Virus record (IMG/VR): IMGVR_UViG_3300023184_000024
Location: 288,755 to 352,754 of that record
Length of the DNA: 64,000 nucleotides
Strand: one strand, 5' to 3'
Shown: positions 1-37,950 of the stretch, in pieces
Layout: each line of letters begins with the position of its first letter
How positions within the stretch are numbered: the first letter of the stretch is position 1
The notes under the pieces: model-generated
Databases searched by the model: none
The model's input: only the letters and a program-made list of their open reading frames with translations
What the model was told of the DNA's origin: nothing
Program-made: the position numbers and the translations under genes

Positions 1-966
1 ACTGATTTTGTAAACGGACAATGGCCAGCAGGATGCGAGCGTTGCCAAATTGAAGAATCTGTTGGAGTTAAAAGTAAGCGACAACTAGATTATGATAGGT
101 TTAAACACGAGTACGACAGCTACGATTTCAACAACAACCAACTGTTGACAGCAAGTATTGCCATTGGCAACGTTTGCAATCTCAAATGCATTATGTGTAA
201 TCCCTATGCCAGTAGCAAATGGCAAAAAGAGTACAACGACATTTACAATGTTAAAATACCTTCTATCGAACGTGTACGGCAAGATTTAATTGATACCTTG
301 GTTGAAATTGCACCTGGACTAATACACATTGATATTCACGGCGGCGAACCTTTTTTGTCCAACATTGATCAACATCATGCATTGTTGGACCACTACATTC
401 AATCAGGGCAAGCACACAACATCAGTATACATTACACCACAAACGGCAGCACTTGGCCAAGTCAGGAGTGCTTGGAAAAATGGCCCAACTTCAAAGAAAT
501 AGATCTACAACTCAGCATAGACGGAGTTGGTAAACGCTACGAGTACATCAGGTATCCTGCTGATTGGGCAACGTTGCAGAATAACGTTAAAAGATTTTTA
601 GAATATCAGACCAAAAATATAAATTTTAAGATCAGTGTGTCTTGCACAGTTAGTGCATATAATATTTTATACCTTGATGAATTAATTGGTTGGTGTCAAA
701 GTGTGGGATTGCCAACTCCGTGGATGGGCAAACTGCACAATCCAGAACCACTTCGTCCCACGGTATGGGCAGATCCTGCTCGCACCTATATCATTGACAG
801 CTTGAACAAAAGCCAGTATAATGAAGTAATTAAATGGGCCAATCTATTGGAAAGCACTGATGATAGTGCACTGTTTAATGAATTTAAAACAAGAACACAG
901 GTCCATGACCAATACAGAGGACTGTGTTTTACTTCTGTATTTCCCGAACTAGCCACCTATATATGA
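1..966 (+). CDS. Radical SAM protein with N-terminal Cys-containing (twitch/SPASM-like) region, 5'-truncated by the window edge
   Basis: Frame +1 is open from base 1 (..GCERCQIEE..). It has CxxxCxxC (CNLKCIMC), GGEP and TTNG motifs. Confidence 0.85.
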   Translation, partial: TDFVNGQWPAGCERCQIEESVGVKSKRQLDYDRFKHEYDSYDFNNNQLLTASIAIGNVCNLKCIMCNPYASSKWQKEYNDIYNVKIPSIERVRQDLIDTLVEIAPGLIHIDIHGGEPFLSNIDQHHALLDHYIQSGQAHNISIHYTTNGSTWPSQECLEKWPNFKEIDLQLSIDGVGKRYEYIRYPADWATLQNNVKRFLEYQTKNINFKISVSCTVSAYNILYLDELIGWCQSVGLPTPWMGKLHNPEPLRPTVWADPARTYIIDSLNKSQYNEVIKWANLLESTDDSALFNEFKTRTQVHDQYRGLCFTSVFPELATYI

Positions 967-2432
967 AACACTGCACTATTGTAATCAAAGACGAAGTGAA
1001 TGTCAAGCTCGAAGGGCTTGATTTAGACATGCGTCAAAGATTAACAAAACAATTCAAATACGAAATACCTTATGCTAGGTATTTGCCGGCAGTGAGACTT
1101 GGTCGGTGGGACGGCAAGATGGCCTACTTCCAACTTGGAGGCAGCACATTCACTAACTTGTTGCCTGAAATCATTCCCATACTTGATCAGTATAACTACA
1201 ATGTTGATCTAGATGATCAACGTGACTACTCGGTGTCTTTTGAGTTTGCACCAATCAAAGAAACTTCATTTGCACACAAGTGTTGGCCCAAAGGCCATCC
1301 ACAAGCTGGTGAACCAGTTATGATGCGTGACTACCAAGTTGAAATTGTCAACAACTACTTGAACAATCCGCAATGTATCCAGGAGGTGGCCACTGGCGCA
1401 GGCAAAACAGTTATGACTGCTGCCTTGAGTCACAGTATTGAACCGTATGGTCGAAGCATTATCATTGTACCAAATAAAAGTTTAGTAACACAAACAGAAA
1501 AAGATTATGTTAACTTGGGTCTGGATGTGGGGGTGTACTTTGGCGATAGAAAAGAATATGGCCGAACACACACTATCTGCACTTGGCAAAGTCTAAACAA
1601 CATGATGAAGAACACCAAGTCTGGTGAAGCAGAAGTCAGCATACAGGACTTTATTGAAGGGGTGATATGTGTCATTGTTGACGAAGTACACATGGCCAAG
1701 GCGGATGCGCTAAAAACTCTGTTAACAGGTGTAATGTCTAGAGTGCCAATCCGTTGGGGTTTAACAGGCACAATACCCAAAGAGAAATTTGAAAGCGTGA
1801 GTTTGTTGGTCAGCCTAGGACCAGTCATTAGCCGACTGGCTGCCAGTGAACTACAGGATCGCGGTGTACTAGCACAGTGTCATGTGAACATTGTGCAGTT
1901 GGTAGATCACGTGGAGTACAATGACTATCAAAGTGAGCTTAAATACTTGCTTGAAGAATCTGGCCGTTTAGACACAATGGCCAATCTCGTACAACAAGTT
2001 AATTTAACTGGCAATACGCTAGTACTAGTAGACCGCACCGAGTGTGGGCGCCAACTGGTAGAACGCCTGGGAGACAAATCAGTGTTTGTGTCCGGAGCAA
2101 CCAAGGCAAAAGACAGACAAGATGAATATGATCAGGTGGCGGACAGTGTTGATAAGATTATTGTGGCTACCTATGGTGTTGCCGCTGTGGGCATTAATAT
2201 CCCTAGGATTTTTAATTTGGTTCTTGTGGAACCCGGAAAAAGCTTTGTCCGCGTTATACAAAGCATTGGGCGTGGCATAAGAAAAGCCGAAGACAAGGAT
2301 CATGTTCAGATCTGGGACATAACAAGCACTTGTAAGTTTGCCAAACGTCACTTGACCAAACGCAAACAGTTCTACAAGGAAGCCAACTATCCTTTCACAC
2401 AAGAAAAGTTGGAATGGATGCGTATTAAATGA
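963..2432 (+). CDS. uvsW: SF2 DNA helicase, T4 UvsW-like
   Basis: Q motif RDYQ, Walker A ATGAGKT, DEVH, LTGT, QSIGRGIR. The ATG at 963 overlaps the upstream stop (ATGA). Confidence 0.85.
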   Translation: MKHCTIVIKDEVNVKLEGLDLDMRQRLTKQFKYEIPYARYLPAVRLGRWDGKMAYFQLGGSTFTNLLPEIIPILDQYNYNVDLDDQRDYSVSFEFAPIKETSFAHKCWPKGHPQAGEPVMMRDYQVEIVNNYLNNPQCIQEVATGAGKTVMTAALSHSIEPYGRSIIIVPNKSLVTQTEKDYVNLGLDVGVYFGDRKEYGRTHTICTWQSLNNMMKNTKSGEAEVSIQDFIEGVICVIVDEVHMAKADALKTLLTGVMSRVPIRWGLTGTIPKEKFESVSLLVSLGPVISRLAASELQDRGVLAQCHVNIVQLVDHVEYNDYQSELKYLLEESGRLDTMANLVQQVNLTGNTLVLVDRTECGRQLVERLGDKSVFVSGATKAKDRQDEYDQVADSVDKIIVATYGVAAVGINIPRIFNLVLVEPGKSFVRVIQSIGRGIRKAEDKDHVQIWDITSTCKFAKRHLTKRKQFYKEANYPFTQEKLEWMRIK

Positions 2433-2442
2433 CTGCCATAGG

Positions 2443-2471
2443 TTGACATTTCTAGATTATTAGTTTACAAT
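2443..2471 (+). promoter_or_regulatory. sigma70-type promoter
   Basis: TTGACA-N17-TACAAT, ending 7 nt before the ATG at 2478. Confidence 0.75.
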
Positions 2472-3091: not shown

Positions 3092-3373
3092 ATGGCTCTT
3101 AAACCAGGCGTCACTTACATCTATGAACGAGCAGATGGCATAGTATATGCCAGAGAATTTGGCGCAAATCCAGATACACGTCAGGTTGTCGGGTATGCAA
3201 GAGATCATATTGTGTTCCCCAATGGTGTTGGAAACGGAACAGTATTTGGCACAGACATACACAAAGTCGGCGAAATGGTTCAAATTTTAGAAGCCGCAAA
3301 AACCAATCCTGCTTTACAAGATGCACTTGACCGTGCTATAATAATTTATAAACTAGCCAACAAAAATGAGTGA
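3092..3373 (+). CDS. Hypothetical protein
   Basis: ATG at 3092 (MALKPGVTYIYE..); the end overlaps the next gene start. Confidence 0.6.
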   Translation: MALKPGVTYIYERADGIVYAREFGANPDTRQVVGYARDHIVFPNGVGNGTVFGTDIHKVGEMVQILEAAKTNPALQDALDRAIIIYKLANKNE

Positions 3374-3815
3374 CAAACTAAGCATTGCCAATGAGATGAG
3401 AATGTTTGACCGAAAGGTTAGAACTTTCTATGATGATCTCACCGATGAAGAACGCAAAAAATTCAGTAACTATCTTATGATACGTTGGGGTTCCTGTGTT
3501 GATGGCAGCAGAGACATGCAAGAGTTTTATGTGATCTCTACTAATGAACGATTGAACAAACATTTTTTTAGTATTAATAAACATCCCAAGCTTCAATGGC
3601 TTTGCGCTACTTCGGTTAGTCCAGGACTAGGAAGTCAACACCACAACTGGATACCCAATAAGAAAAAAGAAGACGGCAGCAATGCTGTAAAAAAAGCCTT
3701 GATGGAGTTAATGCCAACTACAAAAATGTCTGATATAGAAACATTGTGTAAGCTTATCAGTAAAAAAGAACTAAGAGAACTACTCCGTGAGCACGGCGAC
3801 ACCCCCGACATCTGA
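3366..3815 (+). CDS. Clamp loader small subunit, T4 gp62-like
   Basis: EERKKFSNYLMIRWGS motif, size and replication-gene context. Confidence 0.55.
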   Translation: MSDKLSIANEMRMFDRKVRTFYDDLTDEERKKFSNYLMIRWGSCVDGSRDMQEFYVISTNERLNKHFFSINKHPKLQWLCATSVSPGLGSQHHNWIPNKKKEDGSNAVKKALMELMPTTKMSDIETLCKLISKKELRELLREHGDTPDI

Positions 3816-4485
3816 TTACACCTGCAAGTACTGCGAAAAATCTTTTAGTAGAGAAACCAGTCTGGCAGTGCATGTGTGCGAACAAAAACGGCGCCGCCAA
3901 GAAGAAAAAGAAACAGGAGTGCAACTGGGATTACAGTCTTATCTAAGATTCTACGATCTCACACAAGGGTCGTCAAAGTTTAAAACATTTGATGATTTTG
4001 CAAAGAGTCCATACTATCGAGCATTTGTAAAATTCGGCCGGCATGTACAAGCAATACGAGCAGTTAACCCAACAAGATTCATTGACTGGGTGATCAAAGA
4101 AAATAAAAAAATTGACCACTGGTGTAAAGAAACAGTGTATGCTGAATATCTTAATCAGTACATACGTGTAGAAAATGTAGCCGACGCACTTGAGCGTGCA
4201 ATCAAGCAAGGACTAGCCTGGCACGACGAAACAGGCAATCCACCACACGACTATTTGAGATTTGCCAACCCAAATTTGGTATGCTTTGCTATTACAACAG
4301 GTCGGATCAGTCCTTGGATAGTGTATAATTGTGATTCGGGCACACAGTTTTTAAATTCAATAAATCAAGATCACATAGGAATGATCTGGTCTATCATTGA
4401 CGCAGATTTTTGGAGTAAAAAATTCAAAGACTATCCAGCTGATACTGAATACGTTCGTGAAATAATGACCAAGGCTGGCTGGTAA
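3787..4485 (+). CDS. C2H2 zinc-finger-containing hypothetical protein
   Basis: N-terminal CKYCEKSFSRETSLAVHVC; the TAATG junction couples it to the next gene. Confidence 0.65.
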   Translation: MSTATPPTSDYTCKYCEKSFSRETSLAVHVCEQKRRRQEEKETGVQLGLQSYLRFYDLTQGSSKFKTFDDFAKSPYYRAFVKFGRHVQAIRAVNPTRFIDWVIKENKKIDHWCKETVYAEYLNQYIRVENVADALERAIKQGLAWHDETGNPPHDYLRFANPNLVCFAITTGRISPWIVYNCDSGTQFLNSINQDHIGMIWSIIDADFWSKKFKDYPADTEYVREIMTKAGW

Positions 4486-5054
4486 TGAGTGCAGATATCG
4501 ACATTGACATGCCGGATAGACAGGTGTTATTAAACTTGATTCGGCACACTCCTGCTCGGCAACAAGTAAACGGCACAACTAAAAAACACAACTCCGGGGT
4601 GTATGTTACAAAAATACCCTATGATCCTATTAACAACTGCGCTGCCATTGAATACCAGGAAGCAGAACAACGTGGGTATTTCAAAATTGATTTATTGAAT
4701 ATGAGTGTGTATCAGTTGATTCGCGACCCTGACCACTACGCCGATGTGTTACACAGTCCACCGCCGTGGAGTAGGTTATGGGAAGATTCTGAGTGGGCCA
4801 AGCAATTAGTACATGTGGGGAACTACTCTGAATTGCTTAAGTCAATGCGCCCAGATACCATTCCTAGAATGGCAGCGTTTATCAGTATTATCCGACCAGG
4901 CAAAGCACACTTACAAAATAAAGATTGGAAAGAAGTGTTTGATACTGTTTGGGACGGGGACTCAAGTCAGGGATTTGTGTTTAAAAAGAGTCATGCATTA
5001 AGCTATGCGCAGTTGGTTGCATTGCATATGAATTTAACTAGTCAACTTTCCTGA
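4485..5054 (+). CDS. Miniature DnaE (Pol III alpha, family C)-like nucleotidyltransferase
   Basis: ADIDID, HNSGV, FKIDLL, IRPG and FKKSHALSY match DnaE PDIDID, HAAGV, KFDFL, YRPG and FNKSHAAAY, in the same order. Confidence 0.75.
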   Translation: MSADIDIDMPDRQVLLNLIRHTPARQQVNGTTKKHNSGVYVTKIPYDPINNCAAIEYQEAEQRGYFKIDLLNMSVYQLIRDPDHYADVLHSPPPWSRLWEDSEWAKQLVHVGNYSELLKSMRPDTIPRMAAFISIIRPGKAHLQNKDWKEVFDTVWDGDSSQGFVFKKSHALSYAQLVALHMNLTSQLS

Positions 5055-5415
5055 CTAGTGTGATTGACTTACGCTTACTTTTGCGTTTTATAATGTCATT
5101 AAGACTACAAATAGGCCCGTGAAGTATTTCTAAATCTCGATTAGTAAACGTTCTAAGAGAACTACGAAATGGTTCCCAATCTGATTTTAAAAAGATGTTT
5201 ATTGGGATAGATCTATTGCTTTCCCACCACCAAACATTGGCTAGTTCGATGAACAAAGCCTTGAGTACTGGGTCTTGTATGTTACCAAAGTCGTAGATAG
5301 TGGTAATAGCATCGTCTCTATTCTGTATAATTCCCACATACTCTGTGCCGGCGTGAGTGCACAATGTTATAAACGGATATTTTTCGCTTAGTTTCTTAAA
5401 GATGTTGTCACCCAT
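5038..5415 (-). CDS. Hypothetical protein
   Basis: 125-aa ORF filling the gap, divergent from the 5436 gene. Confidence 0.65.
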   Translation of the reverse strand: MGDNIFKKLSEKYPFITLCTHAGTEYVGIIQNRDDAITTIYDFGNIQDPVLKALFIELANVWWWESNRSIPINIFLKSDWEPFRSSLRTFTNRDLEILHGPICSLNDIIKRKSKRKSITLVRKVD

Positions 5416-5435
5416 AAATATTACTGGAGATTCCT

Positions 5436-6221
5436 ATGTATTCAACCACTGCCTATTTATATCAACAAATTCAACAAGTTTTATTGATAGACACCAGTGG
5501 GTCTTATTTCAACGTGAGGTGGCAACCAGTGTATGCAAAAAACTTAAAACTCAACATTGGGGTAGATAATGTTATTCTATTCCAGTTCTTAAATCAGGAT
5601 CAGAAGCCAGTAAACATCACTGGTGCAACTTTTACTTTTCGGATTATCAGTCAGAATGGTGAGAACTTGCTGTATGCCAAAGAAATGGTCAGTCTAAGCA
5701 ATACTCTTGGGCGGGCAAAAGTAACTATACCTGCCAGTGATTCCGTTACTTTTCAACAACAGCCTGCTAGCTGGAGCATCGAAGTAAGTTCGGGTGTGCT
5801 CAATCAAGCCGTGTTCACTGACGACTATTCAGGCGCTAGGGGAGACATTGACATTGTCAACAGTGTGTTTCCAGCTTTTGTTGCAAGTCAAACATTGACA
5901 ATACCCAGTCAAGCACCTGAATCGGATACTTATTATTCAAGCACACTGACCACTAATGGCTCACGATTGACTACCATGCAAATTGATTCCTTGGACTTCA
6001 CTGGTAATTTAAGTGTACAAGGATCGTCTGATGCCACAGCAAACACAGTAGAGTGGTATAACGTAGATTTCCAAGACTTGGCCACGGGCAACACAGTCAG
6101 CGAGCTTGCTTTTACACACAGCACAGAAAAATTAGGCATTAATATTCAAGGTTACCATCCTTATATTAGATTGGAATTTGGCATCAACAACGGTAACATA
6201 GATCTTATCAAGTATCGATGA
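5436..6221 (+). CDS. Probable virion structural protein (beta-rich, baseplate/BppU-like N-terminus)
   Basis: TAAATA and GGAG upstream, PVNITGATFTFRI motif, Thr/Ser/Asn-rich composition. Confidence 0.45.
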   Translation: MYSTTAYLYQQIQQVLLIDTSGSYFNVRWQPVYAKNLKLNIGVDNVILFQFLNQDQKPVNITGATFTFRIISQNGENLLYAKEMVSLSNTLGRAKVTIPASDSVTFQQQPASWSIEVSSGVLNQAVFTDDYSGARGDIDIVNSVFPAFVASQTLTIPSQAPESDTYYSSTLTTNGSRLTTMQIDSLDFTGNLSVQGSSDATANTVEWYNVDFQDLATGNTVSELAFTHSTEKLGINIQGYHPYIRLEFGINNGNIDLIKYR

Positions 6222-6949
6222 AATTTAAAAAAATTGTGGGGTTCGGTGACAGTTGGATGTGGGGCGACGAGTTACTTGACCCAAAACTGCTCACACACGA
6301 GCGTGCACACCCAGTTCTAATAGAAAATGTTCCTTATCGTGAAAGCAATTGTTTTCTTGGACAATTGGGCACATACTACGGAGTACCAACAGAAAACTTT
6401 GGTATACCGGGCGGTAGTTTACAAAGTACCATCTGGACTTATCTATGGTGGCGCCAACACGAAACTGTGCCACTTGACCAGTGTGTTGTACTAGTAGGAC
6501 TAACTGATCCCAATAGACAAACATTTTACAATCCCAATCATGTGGCTTACTCTAACGACCCGCCGTGGAACCGATTTGTTCACAGTTCCTGGATTCACAG
6601 TGGTGGAACAACACCGGGAGATCCCTGGACACAAATGGTCAAGTCACACATGGTGTTGTCCGACTGCGATGCTGTGCACAAATTGAATTACCAACAAACT
6701 GTGCTGTTTTTTCAAGGACAGGCCCAATATGAAACCGGACCGTTGTTGCAATTTAACACCATGTTTGGTATATTAGACATGCCTTGCTCAACTCTGATTT
6801 GGCCAACCCAGTCATTGGATCATGTGGTACGATCGGAGCCGGGCAACGCCGACTTGTTTGCGCCAATGGGTCACCCAAATGAAAAAGGACATGCGGTTCT
6901 CCGAGATCGCTTGATTACTGAGATTGATCGTGCTATAATAGCACAATGA
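6218..6949 (+). CDS. SGNH/GDSL hydrolase-like protein
   Basis: N-terminal FGDSW, C-terminal GHPNEKGH. Confidence 0.6.
   Translation: MKFKKIVGFGDSWMWGDELLDPKLLTHERAHPVLIENVPYRESNCFLGQLGTYYGVPTENFGIPGGSLQSTIWTYLWWRQHETVPLDQCVVLVGLTDPNRQTFYNPNHVAYSNDPPWNRFVHSSWIHSGGTTPGDPWTQMVKSHMVLSDCDAVHKLNYQQTVLFFQGQAQYETGPLLQFNTMFGILDMPCSTLIWPTQSLDHVVRSEPGNADLFAPMGHPNEKGHAVLRDRLITEIDRAIIAQ
6911..6939 (+). promoter_or_regulatory. sigma70-type promoter for primase
   Basis: TTGATT-N17-TATAAT, ending 7 nt before the ATG at 6946. Confidence 0.6.
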
Positions 6950-7926
6950 TTGATCTGATCCAATACCTGCCAGCAAAACGTAAACAAACGCCATCAGGGT
7001 GGATCAGTTTCAACGCAGTTTGTTGCACCCATAATGGTAATAGTTTAGACAAGCGTCAACGTGGTGGCCTTAAGGCCACAGACCAGGGCTGGAGTTATCA
7101 TTGCTTTAATTGTGGGTACACCGCTAGTTTTATACTTGGTCGCCAGCTGTCACTTAAAGCCCGTAGACTCCTGACTTGGCTGGGCGTACCAGATGCGGAA
7201 ATTGATTATCTCAATTTAGAAAGCCTCAAGCATCGTAACATACACGGCATACTAGAAGATCGCAACAAAACATTCAACACTTTGGCAGCAATTGAGTTTG
7301 AAGAATGTGACTTGCCGCCCTATGCTGAACTGCTAACAGACGAAGGCGACTACAGAGACTATGTGCGTAGTCGACATGTGCCCAACGACTTTCCTGTCAT
7401 GGCACAGATGCAAAATGATGGTATCCATTGGACAAGGCCGCACGTAATAATTCCATTTACTCACAATGACCACATTGTGGGTTATACATGTAGATTTCTT
7501 GACAACAAAACGCCTAAGTACATTTCCAACAGTCAGCCTAACTATGTGTTTGGCACAGACCTGCAACACACTGATTGGGAACATGTACTGGTAATGGAAG
7601 GTATATTTGATGCGCTCTGCATTGGCGGCCTAGCAGTGATGCACAATGCCATCAGTGATGGGCAAGCAAGACTCATACGTAGTCTAGGTAGGCCAGTTAC
7701 TGTAGTGCCTGATCAAGACCGGGCAGGATTAGAGTTAATTGATCGTGCAGTGGAACTAGGCTGGGCAGTTAGTATCCCTGTGTGGCCCAGCCATATCAAA
7801 GACGTAAATGATGCTGTGATTGAATACGGTCGGTTGGGGGCCTTACTAACTATAATGCAGGCAAGGGAAACCAGTCGTATCAAGATTGAATTAAAAAGGA
7901 AGCACCTTGAAAAAAGAATACAATAA
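6946..7926 (+). CDS. DNA primase (T4 gp61-like; Zn ribbon plus TOPRIM)
   Basis: CC..HCFNC zinc-binding region, VMEGIFDA, PDQD and KDVND motifs. Confidence 0.9.
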   Translation: MIDLIQYLPAKRKQTPSGWISFNAVCCTHNGNSLDKRQRGGLKATDQGWSYHCFNCGYTASFILGRQLSLKARRLLTWLGVPDAEIDYLNLESLKHRNIHGILEDRNKTFNTLAAIEFEECDLPPYAELLTDEGDYRDYVRSRHVPNDFPVMAQMQNDGIHWTRPHVIIPFTHNDHIVGYTCRFLDNKTPKYISNSQPNYVFGTDLQHTDWEHVLVMEGIFDALCIGGLAVMHNAISDGQARLIRSLGRPVTVVPDQDRAGLELIDRAVELGWAVSIPVWPSHIKDVNDAVIEYGRLGALLTIMQARETSRIKIELKRKHLEKRIQ

Positions 7927-8632
7927 ACTTTGGGTGCTTGGCGACAGCTTTACAACACCGGGTTATTGTGTTGAACCAAAAGATAGCTTTTGGGGGCTAA
8001 CAGCACAACATTTAAACGTCAAGCAAATAATGAATTGTTCTTGGGTGGGCAATAGCTTTGGCAGTGTACAGCACATGCTAATCAATCAACAGTTGCAATT
8101 TAACTGGAAACATGATTTTTTAATAATTGGAATTCCGCCATTGGAAAGACTCACAGTGTTTGACAATTACAAAGATACCAGACACAATGGCCATTGCATT
8201 GACCCGGCAACATGGGATAACAGTTTGTTTCAAATTGATTGTCACACCGGGTTAGACATCATTCGCGGGCATGACGCACAAATCATGGTAATCCATCAGG
8301 ATCGCAGTTGGGTTGAAACACAGACTTTGAATTCTATATTTTTATTAACTTCTTGGTTAGACTCAGTGGATGCTAATTATGTAATAGTTAACTTGAGTAA
8401 GTCATTGAACGAACATTGTACGTGGAACCCCAATGCGTTTGTACTGCCGTATGTTGCAGAACATTCAAAATGTATTGTGTTTCGTGATACGTATTACGGA
8501 GTTAATTTTGAAAAAATTAAACCAGTGGATTTTGATCAGTATAGTTGGTCGGGGCATCACGGCCCAGCTGGGAATCAAAACTTTTTTGAGAATTCTCTAT
8601 TGCCCACATTAAAAAGGAATAAATTTTGTTAA
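7907..8632 (+). CDS. SGNH hydrolase-like protein
   Basis: VLGDSFT near the N-terminus, GHHG near the C-terminus. Confidence 0.5.
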   Translation: MKKEYNKLWVLGDSFTTPGYCVEPKDSFWGLTAQHLNVKQIMNCSWVGNSFGSVQHMLINQQLQFNWKHDFLIIGIPPLERLTVFDNYKDTRHNGHCIDPATWDNSLFQIDCHTGLDIIRGHDAQIMVIHQDRSWVETQTLNSIFLLTSWLDSVDANYVIVNLSKSLNEHCTWNPNAFVLPYVAEHSKCIVFRDTYYGVNFEKIKPVDFDQYSWSGHHGPAGNQNFFENSLLPTLKRNKFC

Positions 8633-10107
8633 AAGAATATGGACTTGATGTCCAACGTTTGTTTTTAGAAATGATGTTAGAAGATGCACAAAGTTATGTG
8701 CGTGTTCAGAACATCTACAACCCTGCAAATTTTGACAAGAGCCTTAGACCTGCTGCCGAATTTTTCAAAGAACACAGCGACAAACATAAAACATTGCCGG
8801 ACCGTAATCAAATCTCTGCCACAACCGGAATCAAACTTGCACCAGTTCCTGATTTAAATGATGGTCACTATGATTGGTTCATGGAAGAGTTTGAAGCTTT
8901 TACACGCAGGCAAGAACTTGAACGAGCAATTTTAAAAGCCGCTGATCTACTTGAAAAAGGAGAATTTGAGCCAGTTGAAAAGTTAATCAAAGATGCTGTA
9001 CAGATTAGTCTAACCAAGGACATGGGCACAGACTACTTTGCTGACCCTGCTGGCCGTATCAACAAATACTTCAACAGTGGCGGGCAAGTCAGCACAGGCT
9101 GGCCACAATTGGACAAATTATTGTATGGTGGATTCTCTCGTGGAGAGCTTAATATTTTTGCAGGCGGTTCGGGGTCAGGCAAAAGCTTGGTCATGATGAA
9201 CATTGCACTGAGTTGGTTGCAATCTGGCTTAAGTGGTGTATACATCACATTAGAATTGAGCGAAGAGTTGACTAGTTTGCGCACAGACGCAATGTTAACC
9301 AGTATGAGTACCAAAGAAATTCGCAGAGACATTGAAACCACAGAACTCAAAGTCAAATTGATTTCCAAGAAATCAGGGCAGTATCGCGTCAAGGGACTGC
9401 CAGCACAAAGTAATATCAATGATATTAGAAGTTACCTAAAAGAAGTACAAATACAAACAGGCATCAAAGTCGACTTTGTCATGGTTGACTACCTTGATTT
9501 GTTAATGCCAGTGAGCGCAAAAGTTAGTCCCAATGACTTGTTTGTCAAAGACAAGTATGTGAGTGAGGAATTGCGTAACCTGTCCAAAGAACTCGGAGTG
9601 CTACTAGTTACAGCAAGTCAGTTAAACCGTAGTGCAGTTGAGGAAATTGAATTTGACCATAGTCATATCAGCGGCGGCATTAGTAAAATTAACACTGCTG
9701 ATAATGTGTTTGGTATTCTTACCAGCAGACAAATGCGTGAGCGAGGCAAATATCAAATTCAGTGCATGAAGTCACGTAGCAGTACTGGGGTTGGCCAAAA
9801 AATTGATCTAGAGTACAACATTGAAACTATGCGTATCACAGACCCGGGCATAGATGAAAATGCATATAATAGACCACAGAGTTCAATTATGGACAGTATC
9901 AAGGCCAAGAGTCAGGCCAGACAGGCCGATGAACTTGAAGGCAACGCTTCAAAAAGTATCACATGGGAAAAACCAACGGGAACACCTGCCTGGGATTACA
10001 TGTCGGGCGGCAAAGAATTAAAGCCAGAGGTCGCAGGAAAAATTCCAGCCGAAGTACAAAGCGCCAAACTCAAACAATTATTAAGTCAAATTAAACCAAC
10101 AACTTGA
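8626..10107 (+). CDS. Replicative helicase, DnaB/T4 gp41-like
   Basis: GGSGSGKS Walker A, ITLELSE, VDYLDL, TASQLNR. Confidence 0.92.
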   Translation: MLKEYGLDVQRLFLEMMLEDAQSYVRVQNIYNPANFDKSLRPAAEFFKEHSDKHKTLPDRNQISATTGIKLAPVPDLNDGHYDWFMEEFEAFTRRQELERAILKAADLLEKGEFEPVEKLIKDAVQISLTKDMGTDYFADPAGRINKYFNSGGQVSTGWPQLDKLLYGGFSRGELNIFAGGSGSGKSLVMMNIALSWLQSGLSGVYITLELSEELTSLRTDAMLTSMSTKEIRRDIETTELKVKLISKKSGQYRVKGLPAQSNINDIRSYLKEVQIQTGIKVDFVMVDYLDLLMPVSAKVSPNDLFVKDKYVSEELRNLSKELGVLLVTASQLNRSAVEEIEFDHSHISGGISKINTADNVFGILTSRQMRERGKYQIQCMKSRSSTGVGQKIDLEYNIETMRITDPGIDENAYNRPQSSIMDSIKAKSQARQADELEGNASKSITWEKPTGTPAWDYMSGGKELKPEVAGKIPAEVQSAKLKQLLSQIKPTT

Positions 10108-35200: not shown

Positions 35201-36751
35201 ATGATTTTAACTATATTAATGTTTGTTGTGGCTTTGTGCTTGAGTGGTGTGGCCGCATTTTATTCTATTGTAGGGCTTACTGCTATTTTTGCCGCCGCAG
35301 TTACGCCTATTATTTTAATGGGCAGTATTTTAGAAGTGGCCAAGCTCACAGTCACAGTTTGGTTGCACGACTACTGGCATCGTATTCGCTGGTTAATGAA
35401 GGTGTATTTGTGCTCAGCAGTGGTTGTATTGATGATAATCACCAGCATGGGCATATTTGGATTTTTGTCAAAAGCGCACAGCGACCAAGGCATGGTGTCG
35501 GGTGATGTACTTGCCAAGATCAGTGTATATGATGAAAAAATTAAAATCTCAAAGGAAAATATAGATGCAAATCGCCGGGCACTTAAACAAATGGATGAAG
35601 CTGTGGACCAAGTTATGGGCCGAAGCACAGATGAAAAAGGTGCAGATAAAGCTGTACAAATCCGCAGGACCCAACAGAAGGAACGTGCTAGACTCCTTGC
35701 CGAAATTGAAGCCGAACAGAAAAAAATTACAGCACTTAATGAAGAACGAGCCCCTATTGCTGCCGAGGTACGCAAGGTTGAGGCAGAAGTCGGTCCGATA
35801 AAATACATTGCCGCATTGATTTACGGTGATGATCCAGATGCCAATTTACTAGAACGTGCAGTACGTTGGGTGATTATACTATTGGTGGTGGTGTTTGATC
35901 CTTTGGCAGTGATGATGTTGCTGGCCGCAACTGAAAGTAGAAAATGGTTGCGCGAAGATAAACTCAAGTACCCTCCTGATGACGGTCCTTTAACTGAAGA
36001 ACAAATCGAACAAATCAAGGAATCTGCCAAAGAAGACTTGCCCACTAGTGAGCTGGTAACCAAAGATGAGCTATTCCCAGTGGACCCTTCCCCACCAGGG
36101 TGGATGTACAACACCACTACAACAACATATCCTTCTACCGAAGAAGAAGTTGAAGAGTTGACACAAGAGTTTGATCGTAGCAAACACGCATACTTAGACA
36201 AGCCGTTTGTGCATTTTGAAAACCTCACGCCTATGGTGGCAAAAAAACAACCTGAAATCACTGCGGAGGAAGTCAGCATTGCTGTATCTACTCCAGAAAA
36301 GGATGAGGATGAGGATGGTGACAACGACAGTGACGTGGTAAAAATGGCCAAGACATTGTGGAAACAAGCAAACCCAACTAGCACTCTTAAAGATCAACGA
36401 AGACTATTACAATTCAAAGCAATAGATCATCTTCCTTGGTATGACTACATTGAACAAGCTGAGAATGAAGTTATTATACCGTTTGGTGACCGCTTACCCG
36501 ACACCGGTGAGAAAGCTAGCAAAAAAGGCAATCAATATATACACACGGGATATTTGCCCACTAAGTTATTCAAATACAATGGATCTAAATGGATTGAGGT
36601 TGACAAAAACCTCACAGACCGTTATGCTTACAATGATGCCTACATAGATTTTTTAATAAAAAAAGTTGGCACAGGTGAATATGACCCCGAGCTATTAAAT
36701 GATAGCGAACGAACTCAACTAGAACTTAAACTTAAAAGAGAAATTATTTAA
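35201..36751 (+). CDS. Membrane protein with coiled-coil and acidic domains
   Basis: Three N-terminal TM segments, a long heptad region, a fourth TM, and an acidic linker. Confidence 0.65.
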
Positions 36752-37950
36752 TGTCAGACACAGCACTTCAACAATACCAACATAAATGTAGTTTTTGCGG
36801 CAAAGAAAAAGACATCGTTAACAAGTTAATTGTCAGTGATGCAGTTGCTATTTGTAATGAATGCGTTTTTTTATGTCAAGACTTACTAGTAGATAAACCG
36901 TTATCAGAAGAAACAAACAGCAGTGACTCGTTGGATCCAATGAAACTCAAGGCGTATCTTGACCAGTATGTGGTTGGTCAAGAGCAGGCAAAAATAGTAT
37001 TAAGTGTGGCCATTGTTAATCATTATAAAAGAATTAATAAGTCTTCAGAAGGCCCAAATATTAGTAAAGCCAACATTTTAATGATTGGCCCCACGGGCTG
37101 TGGCAAAACATTACTGGCCAAAACTGTGGCCAAATACCTTGACGTGCCGTTTGTAATAGGTGATGCTACCAGTATTACCGAAGCTGGCTACGTAGGTGAC
37201 GATGTTGAAACACTGATTAGTCGACTGCATGCAGTGGGCGGCAACGATGTTAGCAAGACACAACGTGGCATTGTTTTCATTGATGAAATTGATAAAATTA
37301 GTCGAAAAAGCGAAAGTACCAGTATCACACGTGATGTGTCTGGCGAAGGTGTTCAGCAGGCATTGTTAAAATTAGTTGAAGGAACTGTTTGCCGTATTCC
37401 GGCCGGCGGCGGCAGGAAGCATCCTGGTGGAGACATGATTGAAATCGATACATCAGACATATTGTTTATTGCAGGCGGTGCCTTTGTTGGATTAGAAAAG
37501 ATTATTAAAAATAGAACACAGGGCACATCTATTGGATTCAACACACTTATATCAGACAACAAAGAAGTTGATATTTCACAAAGTTCACCCGATGACTTGG
37601 TCAAGTTTGGTATGATTCCTGAGTTTGTTGGGCGTTTCCCAAGCACAGTCACACTCAAAGATCTTGAACACAGTGACATGATTAGAATCTTAACTGAAAT
37701 AAAAGACAACTACATTGATCAATATCAGTGGTTGTTTTCCCAGGACTCGATTGATCTGAATTTTAATAAAGAATCCATTGAAGCACTGGTGACACGAGCA
37801 TTGGAATCAGGCACTGGAGCTCGGGCACTGCACACTGAGCTAGAACGTGCGTTGATGCCGCACATGTATAAACTAAGAGACTACCAGGCTCGGGGCATTT
37901 CCGAGGTCAACATTGTACCTGAGTTTATAAGTACTCCTACTTCACTGTAA
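36751..37950 (+). CDS. clpX: ATP-dependent Clp protease ATPase ClpX
   Basis: CSFC..CNEC Zn domain, [30 protein letters not shown] loop, TGARAL. Confidence 0.96.

What the first reader, a model, noticed from the sequence alone, without database searches (positions are those of the whole stretch)
3787..5054. 189-aa mini-DnaE retaining all three catalytic aspartates
Seen: five DnaE motifs occur in order (ADIDID, HNSGV, FKIDLL, IRPG, FKKSHALSY) in under 200 aa. The PHP, clamp-binding and OB domains and most thumb/finger sequence are missing, and the deletions fall between motifs, which argues against simple truncation. The gene is translationally coupled (TAATG) to a C2H2-finger protein and lies next to a gp62-like clamp-loader gene. 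Known: DnaE is normally over 1000 aa, and T4-type replisomes use a family B polymerase. Inference: a repurposed minimal nucleotidyltransferase (priming, end-labelling or signal-nucleotide synthesis), or one subunit of a split enzyme with the Zn-finger protein supplying DNA binding.
Basis: partly seen in the sequence, partly recalled or inferred. Interest (0 to 1): 0.78.

Follow-up and report, generated by a model that had tools for sequence, protein, structure and literature searches.

The report
Half of a split mini-DnaE polymerase
The 189-residue protein is the catalytic C-terminal half of a two-gene, stripped-down DNA polymerase III alpha that is typical of T4-related jumbo phages; it was described by sequence analysis in 2021, its other half lies about 96 kb away in the same genome, and nobody has yet tested what it does.

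Summary
Window 4485-5054 (+) encodes a 189-aa protein with the DnaE motifs in order. Its start overlaps the stop of a zinc-finger gene (TAATG).

It is not a stand-alone mini-enzyme. It is the C-terminal subunit (phrog_11778) of the split minimal Pol III alpha that Iyer et al. 2021 described in group 2.2 jumbo phages.

- **The partner.** The N-terminal subunit (174-180 aa, GRGS nucleotide-binding loop, phrog_11127) is encoded at genome position 36656-37198. It ends exactly where the C piece begins.
- **Selection.** The three aspartates, K67, RPG and the steric-gate S-H are conserved in at least 97% of 86 diverse and in all 80 close homologues. Length is fixed at about 180-220 aa, and dN/dS is about 0.11.
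- **Fold.** The model (pLDDT 96) matches only Pol III alpha structures.
- **Pairing.** The two pieces are predicted to bind (score 0.86, best control 0.00). Rare natural 375-aa fusions join them in N-to-C order.
- **Genome context.** It has no PHP, OB or DnaQ domain, and it carries an 890-aa family B polymerase.
Coupling to the zinc-finger gene is not conserved (27 of 75 relatives). The 'gp62-like' neighbour is unconfirmed.

The biochemical role is inferred: most likely a low-processivity accessory DNA polymerase.

The parts
4485..5054 (+). C-terminal (Mg2+/template-side) subunit of the split minimal Pol III alpha, 189 aa
   Evidence: phrog_11778 E 2.4e-50. Profile versus E. coli alpha E 2.4e-6. 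hhalign maps 31-185 to alpha 507-775. AF2 model pLDDT 96. Foldseek top 11 matches are all Pol III alpha.
4494..4508 (+). D4-I-D6-I-D8, equivalent to E. coli D401, D403 (catalytic) and D405
   Evidence: Junction-spanning alignment of the fused homologue P0180 with 2HNH and hhalign. D4 and D6 are conserved in 85/86 and D8 in 84/86 diverse sequences, and all three in 80/80 close homologues.
4587..4601 (+). H35-N-S-G38-V, equivalent to the E. coli K510-HAGGV palm strand that follows the (deleted) thumb
   Evidence: hhalign. H35 and G38 are each conserved in 84/86 sequences.
4683..4691 (+). K67-I-D69, equivalent to E. coli K553 and the third catalytic Asp D555
   Evidence: K67 and D69 are invariant in 86/86 and 80/80 sequences.
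4893..4901 (+). R137-P138-G139, equivalent to E. coli R639-P640-G641 (start of the fingers)
   Evidence: R137 and P138 are invariant in alignment A1.
4980..5006 (+). F166-KKSH170-ALSY, equivalent to E. coli F756-NKS759-H760-SAAY. This is the steric-gate helix that touches the sugar of the incoming dNTP.
   Evidence: Alignments. H760 is described as the steric gate in PMC8485763. H170 is conserved in 83/86, K167 in 80/86 and S169 in 68/86 sequences.
4483..4487 (+). TAATG: the stop of the zinc-finger gene overlaps the start of the C piece
   Evidence: Sequence. The same junction occurs in 20 of 75 close relatives; 48 of 75 have 11 to more than 1500 nt inserted here.
3787..4485 (+). 232-aa protein with one N-terminal C2HC zinc finger (codons 13-31, nt 3823-3879) and an uncharacterised body of about 200 aa. 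It is a conserved member of the same replication gene module.
   Evidence: phrog_11058 E 4.9e-52. Found in 89 phage records. C13, C16, H29 and C31 are invariant. Only the finger matches Pfam or the PDB.
3366..3815 (+).
   Evidence: phrog_11758, unknown function. No match to T4 gp62 or PF16790 by profile tests. The Atlas look-alikes include clusters in which a minority of members carry PF16790.
5038..5415 (-). Convergent 125-aa ORF that overlaps the last 17 nt of the C-piece gene; conserved partner in gene order, function unknown
   Evidence: phrog_11637 E 1.1e-32. The same convergent overlap occurs in RaK2, PAC2, Atu_ph07 and SCTP-2, in 66/78 relatives and beside the fused gene.
924..2432 (+). 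UvsW-like helicase; upstream border of the conserved module
   Evidence: Pfam ResIII, Helicase_C and UvsW_N. Synteny.
6946..7926 (+). gp61-like primase (Toprim); downstream part of the module
   Evidence: phrog_47 E 7.6e-31. Synteny.
8626..10107 (+). gp41/DnaB-like replicative helicase
   Evidence: ORF. Annotated homologues in the same position.

Best explanation
**What it is.** Window 4485-5054 encodes the C-terminal subunit of a two-subunit, minimal C-family (Pol III alpha-like) nucleotidyltransferase. This enzyme is a core gene pair of T4-related 'group 2.2' jumbo phages.

- The C subunit carries the metal-binding triad (D4, D6, D69), K67, the RPG turn and the steric-gate helix (S169-H170).
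- The N subunit is encoded separately, 2-5 genes upstream of the gp44-like clamp loader (here at genome 36656-37198). It carries the GxGRGS triphosphate-binding loop.
- Each piece is translated on its own. There is no room for intein halves.
- The two assemble non-covalently into a palm-plus-proximal-fingers enzyme of about 42 kDa. Neither piece alone has a complete active site.

Shown here: homology, conservation, the split, the predicted pairing and the natural fusion.

**What it probably does (inferred, about 0.5).** The heterodimer is likely a template-dependent polymerase that selects dNTPs. Lacking thumb, clamp-binding and OB domains, it would have low processivity. It would work beside the family B replicase in primer extension, gap filling or recombination-dependent synthesis, possibly helped by neighbouring module proteins.
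For: **Family and literature**
- phrog_11778 and phrog_11127.
- Iyer et al. 2021 describe the same split minimal Pol III alpha in group 2.2 jumbo phages.

**Homology mapping to E. coli alpha**
- N family 17-180 maps to alpha 241-393 (probability 89%).
- C family 31-185 maps to alpha 507-775 (probability 76%).
- PDB profile hit at E 2.4e-6.

**Fold**
- AF2 pLDDT 96.
- The Foldseek top 11 are all Pol III alpha; rank 12 has probability 0.04.

**Selection**
- Catalytic and substrate-side residues are conserved in at least 97% of 86 representatives sharing 27-63% identity, and in 80/80 close relatives.
- Full-length homologues are 178-220 aa.
- dN/dS is about 0.11.

**The split and the pairing**
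- All N pieces stop right after EF[LI][KR], with GxGRGS invariant in 127 sequences.
- Both pieces are found in the same set of about 90 phage genomes, tens of kb apart.
- Predicted complex scores 0.86 against a best control of 0.00. That mark was reached by 51 of 78 solved complexes and 2 of 108 mismatched pairs. The interface includes the GRGS loop (N 141-154) and the DIDID strand (C 3-10).
- Natural 375-376-aa N-to-C fusions exist in three samples. They align across the junction with alpha 319-417 at E 3.5e-6, sit at the C-piece locus and are nested among split forms.

**Evidence for a role in DNA synthesis**
- The steric-gate His is retained.
- Both genes lie in replication modules: UvsW...primase-helicase, and the clamp loader.
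- Family B polymerase is present, and no other DnaE domains exist in the genome.
Against: - No biochemical or genetic data exist for any member.
- The enzyme lacks the thumb, about 80 residues of the fingers (alpha 663-742, including the YQEQ stretch seen), and the clamp-binding and OB domains. Stable binding of a primer-template is therefore not assured.
- The complex prediction partly reflects the model rebuilding a known single-chain fold. It shows likeness, not measured binding.
- Single-sequence searches of the C piece against Pfam and the PDB are negative. Only profiles and structure reveal the homology.
- Expression could not be checked, because no RNA runs hold this sequence.
Confidence: 0.8

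Rival explanations
1. The heterodimer is catalytically active but is not a templated DNA polymerase. It would be a template-independent or specialised nucleotidyltransferase: end-tailing, priming-like initiation, protein or RNA nucleotidylation, or synthesis of a signalling nucleotide for host takeover or counter-defence.
For: - The core is a Pol-beta-like NTase fold (GS + DxD + D), which serves many non-polymerase enzymes.
- The thumb, most of the fingers and all DNA- and clamp-binding appendages are gone.
- The genome already has a full family B replicase.
Against: - It keeps fingers elements specific to C-family polymerases, including the RPG turn and the steric-gate S-H helix that reads the deoxyribose of an incoming dNTP.
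- It is a core gene pair embedded in replication modules rather than in variable accessory regions.
- Its closest structures are only replicative Pol III alpha, not cGAS/DncV-type or tailing NTases.
Confidence: 0.17
2. One reading: the 189-aa protein acts with the translationally coupled zinc-finger protein as its DNA-binding subunit. This could be a two-part enzyme, or a third subunit added to N+C.
For: - TAATG coupling occurs here and in 20 close relatives.
- The zinc-finger gene is always upstream in the same module and is found in 89 phage genomes.
- The enzyme lacks its own DNA-binding appendages.
Against: - Adjacency is lost in 48 of 75 close relatives.
- One or two other genes lie between the two genes in RaK2, Atu_ph07 and SCTP-2.
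- No zinc-finger gene is seen in the 518 nt upstream of the fused gene.
- Co-occurrence is uninformative, because all of these are core genes of the clade.
- The C piece alone lacks the GS half of the active site.
Confidence: 0.12
3. It is a decaying remnant of a captured bacterial dnaE, or an ordinary split or intein-spliced DnaE whose remaining domains are encoded elsewhere.
For: The CBB authors read the N piece as a truncated Pol III alpha. A second DnaE-like piece does exist elsewhere in the genome.
Against: - Length is fixed, the catalytic residues are conserved in at least 97% of 364 clusters at 50% identity (86 examined), and dN/dS is about 0.11.
- No PHP, Pol3-finger, OB-associated or RNase_T matches exist anywhere in the complete 352,754-bp genome.
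- Only 3 residues precede the DxD strand and the N piece stops at the conserved boundary, so there is no room for intein halves.
- The natural fusions are only 375 aa long.
Confidence: 0.01

Closest known systems
Split minimal DNA polymerase III alpha of group 2.2 (T4-related, RaK2/121Q/PA5oct/Atu_ph07-type) jumbo phages, described by Iyer, Anantharaman, Krishnan, Burroughs and Aravind 2021 (Viruses 13:63); PHROG families 11778 (C piece) and 11127 (N piece)
   Same: - Two separate genes at distant loci.
- The N piece carries the NTP-binding loop. The C piece carries the Mg2+-binding aspartates and the template-side helices.
- It co-occurs with a family B polymerase and a T4-like replisome.
- No other Pol III domains are present.
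   Different: - This copy is at most about 40% identical to those of cultured phages. It belongs to a large freshwater metagenomic clade.
- Added here: the exact break point, a rare natural re-fusion, the predicted heterodimer, selection statistics and the two conserved gene neighbourhoods.
Bacterial replicative C-family polymerases DnaE/PolC (E. coli Pol III alpha 2HNH/5FKV, Taq 2HPI/3E0D/4IQJ, M. tuberculosis DnaE1 7PU7)
   Same: - The palm has a Pol-beta-like fold.
- GRGS loop (R362-S364).
- Triad D401/D403/D555, plus K553.
- RPG turn.
- FNKSH steric-gate helix.
   Different: - Total size is about 365 aa in two chains, against more than 1000 aa in one.
- There is no PHP, thumb, middle fingers (alpha about 663-742), beta-clamp-binding/(HhH)2, OB or tau-binding domain.
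- No epsilon (DnaQ) is found in this genome.
Cyanobacterial split DnaE joined by a split intein (Npu/Ssp DnaE)
   Same: A dnaE-type gene is encoded as two distant ORFs.
   Different: In the cyanobacterial case two large halves of a full-length DnaE carry intein halves and are spliced into one chain. Here the pieces are tiny, have no intein sequence, break inside the palm just before the DxD strand, and must assemble non-covalently.
Minimal nucleotidyltransferases of the Pol-beta superfamily (MNT-type, about 100-150 aa)
   Same: The GS...DxD...D catalytic signature is spread over a small core.
   Different: The phage enzyme's sequence and structure matches are specifically to C-family polymerases, including fingers helices. 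The signature is divided between two polypeptides.

Membership tests
Split minimal Pol III alpha of group 2.2 jumbo phages (C subunit, phrog_11778) | Stand-alone protein of about 190 aa that matches the family profile over its full length | tested here: met
   phrog_11778 E 2.4e-50, residues 3-186 against profile positions 7-192 of 197. Full-length tblastn matches in 93 phage genomes.
Split minimal Pol III alpha of group 2.2 jumbo phages (C subunit, phrog_11778) | Mg2+-binding DxD plus a third Asp, aligned with the Pol III alpha catalytic triad | tested here: met
   D4, D6 and D69 align with D401, D403 and D555 and are conserved in at least 85 of 86 sequences.
Split minimal Pol III alpha of group 2.2 jumbo phages (C subunit, phrog_11778) | A separate N-terminal NTP-binding subunit encoded at a distant locus of the same genome | tested here: met
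   Genome 36656-37198: PF07733 E 3.1e-8 and phrog_11127 E 7.9e-44, with GxGRGS invariant. It lies 95.6 kb from the C piece across the genome ends; the distance is 96-108 kb in three relatives.
Split minimal Pol III alpha of group 2.2 jumbo phages (C subunit, phrog_11778) | The host phage has a T4-like replisome with a family B polymerase and no other Pol III domains | tested here: met
   Family B polymerase of 890 aa. UvsW, gp61-like, gp41-like and gp44-like genes are present. No PHP, Pol3-finger or RNase_T hits.
Split minimal Pol III alpha of group 2.2 jumbo phages (C subunit, phrog_11778) | The two subunits reconstitute one active enzyme | tested here: inconclusive
   Predicted complex scores 0.86 against a best control of 0.00, and natural fusions exist. 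Physical association and activity cannot be tested with these tools.
Bacterial replicative DnaE/PolC (C-family holoenzyme alpha subunit) | N-terminal PHP domain | tested here: not met
   No PF02811 match anywhere in the genome at E<=10.
Bacterial replicative DnaE/PolC (C-family holoenzyme alpha subunit) | Thumb and complete fingers domains | tested here: not met
   Alpha about 418-506 and 663-742 have no counterpart. There is no PF17657 match.
Bacterial replicative DnaE/PolC (C-family holoenzyme alpha subunit) | Beta-clamp-binding/(HhH)2 and OB domains; a single chain of more than 1000 aa | tested here: not met
   The protein ends at the equivalent of alpha about 775. N+C total about 365 aa, and the natural fusions are 375 aa.
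Bacterial replicative DnaE/PolC (C-family holoenzyme alpha subunit) | Palm with a Pol-beta-like fold and a steric-gate His | tested here: met
   Foldseek top 11 are all Pol III alpha. S169-H170 align with S759-H760.
Intein-split DnaE | Intein N and C halves flanking the break | tested here: not met
   The N piece ends at the conserved EFLR, and the C piece begins MSA-DIDID. The fused form has only about 10 linker residues.
T4 gp62 clamp-loader small subunit (for the neighbouring ORF 3366-3815) | Sequence or profile similarity to gp62 / PF16790 | tested here: inconclusive
   - hhalign against T4 gp62 gives probability 0.3%.
- No PDB profile hit.
- No PF16790 hit in 30 family members or in the genome.
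- Against this, 66 of the 100 nearest Atlas clusters are of a set in which a minority of members carry PF16790.
- A structure comparison could not be run.

The most novel reading that the evidence does not exclude
The N+C heterodimer of about 42 kDa is the smallest natural template-dependent C-family DNA polymerase. It serves as a dedicated second polymerase of the T4-type jumbo-phage replisome, for example extending primers or filling gaps during recombination-dependent replication. Module neighbours such as the C2HC protein or the clamp loader would supply the missing DNA-binding and processivity functions. As Iyer et al. suggested, it would also model the ancestral core of the bacterial replicase.
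Probability: 0.3. Interest if true: 0.7.

Novelty: new member of a known kind. Interest (0 to 1): 0.42.

Why it matters
C-family polymerases are the bacterial replicases and are known only as multi-domain proteins of more than 1000 residues. A naturally selected catalytic core of about 365 residues, in two chains, defines the minimum needed for this chemistry. It gives a tractable model for the origin of the bacterial replicase.

It also raises the question of why thousands of jumbo phages that already have a family B replicase keep it under strong purifying selection.

The family has been published (2021) but never tested. The natural fusion and the exact break point found here give ready-made constructs for that test.

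Tried and rejected
**Searches that found nothing**
- Megablast of 3300-5500 against phage genomes: no match.
- Pfam and NCBIfam on the C piece: no hit.
- Single-sequence phmmer of the C piece against the PDB: no hit. Only profiles, hhalign and structure showed the homology.

**Readings rejected**
- Decaying gene: rejected on conservation, fixed length and dN/dS.
- Ordinary split or intein DnaE: rejected, because there are no further DnaE domains and no room for inteins.
- gp62 identity of ORF 3366-3815: PDB profile, Pfam on 30 members, hhalign against T4 gp62 and PF16790 against the genome were all negative. Only an Atlas lead remains.
- The 102-aa ORF after the gp44-like gene also shows no similarity to gp62.

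- Expression: no RNA run holds the sequence, and a literature search for PA5oct transcriptome data on these genes gave nothing usable.
The single-protein scan gave one MAG contig.
Full report
**1. The observation**

The window is the last 64 kb of a complete 352,754-bp virus genome with direct terminal repeats. ORF 4485-5054 (+) encodes 189 aa. It contains ADIDID, HNSGV, FKIDLL, IRPG and FKKSHALSY in that order. Its ATG overlaps the TAA of ORF 3787-4485 as TAATG.

Pfam and NCBIfam do not recognise the protein. PHROGs places it in phrog_11778 'DNA polymerase' at E 2.4e-50 over its full length.

**2. Is it really a DnaE palm?**

Several independent tests agree.

- A profile of 82 diverse homologues (alignment A1) hits only Pol III alpha chains in the PDB, with E. 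coli 2HNH at E 2.4e-6. Positions 54-140 align with alpha 538-641, and positions 151-180 with alpha 739-769.
- hhalign against E. coli DnaE (fetched) maps C-piece 31-185 onto alpha 507-775, and more weakly 2-55 onto 399-474.
- The residue equivalences are D4/D6/D8 = D401/D403/D405, H35 = H511, K67/D69 = K553/D555, R137-P138-G139 = R639-P640-G641, and S169-H170 = S759-H760.
[quoted passage not shown] D401, D403 and D555 are the active-site aspartates (PMC8485763).
- An AlphaFold2 model built on A1 has mean pLDDT 96.
- Its 11 best Foldseek matches in the PDB are all Pol III alpha (Taq 4IQJ/3E0D/2HPI, M. tuberculosis 7PU7, 9QPC, E. coli 2HNH/5FKV/5FKU), with probabilities of 0.47-1.00. Rank 12 has probability 0.04.
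- The thumb (alpha about 418-506) and about 80 residues of the fingers (alpha 663-742) have no counterpart. The protein ends at the equivalent of alpha about 775.

**3. Not a decaying gene**

- An exhaustive search of 1.84 billion cluster representatives finds 364 clusters at E<=0.001. The full-length members are 178-220 aa. At 90% clustering there are more than 6,400 members.
- In 86 representatives sharing 27-63% identity, K67 and D69 are invariant. D4, D6, R137 and P138 are conserved in 85/86, and D8, H35 and G38 in 84/86. H170 is conserved in 83/86 and K167 in 80/86.
- All these residues are invariant in 80 close relatives from IMG/VR.
- Pairwise dN/dS for pairs with unsaturated synonymous sites has a median of 0.11 (53 pairs).

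**4. The missing half**

Searching the whole genome with PF07733 gave one hit, not at the C piece but at genome 36974-37192, inside a 180-aa ORF. The gene call is 174 aa (P0271).

- This protein (phrog_11127, E 7.9e-44) aligns with alpha 241-393 (probability 89%).
- It carries GVGRGS, equivalent to the E. coli G361-R362-G363-S364 nucleotide-binding loop.
- It ends at ...DPQEFLR, exactly the stretch that in DnaE precedes the PDFDVD strand with which the C piece begins.
- In 127 homologues, including PA5oct-type, CBB, Atu_ph07 and SCTP-2 phages, GxGRGS is invariant. Every protein stops right after EF[LI][KR]. The break point is therefore ancient and precise.
- The two pieces occur in the same set of jumbo phages (96 and 87 records), always tens of kb apart.
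- Here they are 95.6 kb apart across the genome ends. In three large related contigs they are 96-108 kb apart.
- The complete genome has no PHP, Pol3-finger or RNase_T (DnaQ) match. It does have an 890-aa family B polymerase.

**5. Do the halves work together?**

- The complex predictor gave 0.86 in each of three runs, against 0.00 for the best of three controls. That mark was reached by 51 of 78 solved complexes and 2 of 108 mismatched pairs. The interface has about 165 contacts and includes N 141-154 (the GRGS loop) and C 3-10 (the DIDID strand). Because the pair resembles a solved single-chain fold, this shows likeness rather than proven binding.
- Independent support comes from natural fusions. 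Three clusters of 375-376-aa proteins (P0180, P0391, P0392) come from three samples.
- Their residues 1-180 align with the N piece (E 7e-25), and their residues 190-372 with the C piece.
- P0180 aligns in one uninterrupted stretch across the junction with E. coli alpha 319-417 (E 3.5e-6).
- The fused gene sits at the C-piece locus, with the same convergent small ORF and a homologue of the following gene.
- In a FastTree of 100 C pieces, the fused clade (support 1.0) is nested among stand-alone forms, 12 nodes from the midpoint root. It is most simply a secondary re-fusion.
- Only three residues precede the DxD strand, so neither piece has room for intein halves.

**6. Literature**

- Iyer et al. 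[quoted passage not shown] They suggest it cooperates with the family B enzyme in strand synthesis or repair.
- The CBB and Atu_ph07 genome papers noticed only the N piece, as a 'truncated' Pol III alpha.
- A later search found no experimental follow-up in the library.

**7. Gene context**

The C piece lies in a module conserved from RaK2 to PA5oct-type phages, Atu_ph07 and SCTP-2. The gene order is:

- UvsW helicase
- small ORFs
- the C2HC protein
- zero to two further ORFs
- the C piece
- a convergent ORF of about 120 aa that overlaps its 3' end
- a protein of about 260 aa
- gp61-like primase
- gp41-like helicase

The N piece lies 2-5 genes upstream of the gp44-like clamp loader in this phage, PAC2, CBB, Atu_ph07 and SCTP-2. 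Both locations point to DNA replication or repair.

**8. The zinc-finger protein and the 'gp62-like' gene**

- The 232-aa protein (phrog_11058) has invariant C13, C16, H29 and C31. It has sub-threshold C2H2 matches limited to residues 11-30. The remaining 200 or so residues match nothing.
- It is present in 89 phage genomes.
- It is directly adjacent to the C piece in only 27 of 75 close relatives, 20 of them with the same TAATG. In the other 48, 11 to more than 1500 nt are inserted.
- In RaK2, Atu_ph07 and SCTP-2 one or two genes intervene.
- A role as a DNA-binding partner is therefore possible but unsupported.
- ORF 3366-3815 shows no profile-level similarity to T4 gp62 or PF16790. Only language-model look-alikes point that way.

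**9. Mechanism and verdict**

Shown: this is the catalytic C subunit of a conserved, selected, two-gene minimal Pol III alpha-like enzyme. The other half of its active site is supplied in trans.

Inferred: the two halves assemble non-covalently. Because the C-family-specific fingers helices and the steric-gate His are retained, and because both genes sit in replication modules, the enzyme most likely performs template-directed dNTP incorporation with low processivity, as an accessory to the family B replicase (about 0.5). A non-templated or signalling nucleotidyltransferase role remains open (about 0.17).

The kind is already in the literature, so this copy is a new, divergent freshwater member. 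The biology remains untested and worth an experiment.

Noticed in passing
window 5038-5415 (-): A 125-aa ORF (phrog_11637) converges on the C-piece gene and overlaps its last 17 nt. The same convergent overlap (8-36 nt) is kept in RaK2, PAC2, Atu_ph07 and SCTP-2, in 66 of 78 close relatives, and beside the fused gene. No family or fold lead was found.
   Followed up: partly
window 4483-4487 and the equivalent position in loci L009-L088: The junction between the zinc-finger gene and the C piece is an insertion hot spot. In 75 relatives the gap ranges from a 4-nt overlap to more than 1500 nt of extra ORFs.
   Followed up: partly
P0180, P0391, P0392; loci L008 and L095: Rare natural N-to-C fusions of the two pieces (375-376 aa) occur in three metagenome samples. 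They are located at the C-piece locus and nested among split forms in the tree, so they look like a secondary re-fusion.
   Followed up: yes
genome C1:36656-40160 (locus L089 8657-12160), outside the window: The N piece sits in a conserved module: an ORF of about 200 aa, the N piece, an ORF of about 115-160 aa, a GroES-like protein, MazG, the gp44-like clamp loader, and an ORF of about 100 aa. The same order is seen in PAC2, CBB, Atu_ph07 and SCTP-2.
   Followed up: partly
window 6218-6949 (+) and 7907-8632 (+): Two ORFs of about 240 aa flank the primase gene. Both begin with a GDS(W/F) motif reminiscent of GDSL/SGNH hydrolases. They are absent from this position in RaK2 and PAC2 and have no family hit.
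   Followed up: no
window 3313-3342 (+) and 2443-2471 (+): Near-consensus sigma-70-like promoters (11 of 12 matches, one with an extended -10) lie just upstream of ORFs 3366 and 2478. This hints that 3366-5054 is one early or middle transcription unit. It is a consensus match only.
   Followed up: no
window 3366-3815 (+): Language-model look-alikes of this 149-aa protein include many clusters in which a minority of members carry PF16790 (T4 gp62 clamp-loader subunit). All sequence-profile tests were negative.
   Followed up: partly
window 145-966 (+) and genome C1:40715-41701 (-): Two radical-SAM-domain ORFs, one just upstream of UvsW and one near the N-piece/clamp-loader module.
   Followed up: no
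window 3300-5500; locus L097: The sequence recurs in lake and freshwater metagenomes from several independent studies. A 72%-identical copy lies on a 7.9-kb contig binned into an uncultured Lishizhenia (Bacteroidota) MAG, which is a weak hint at the host.
   Followed up: partly
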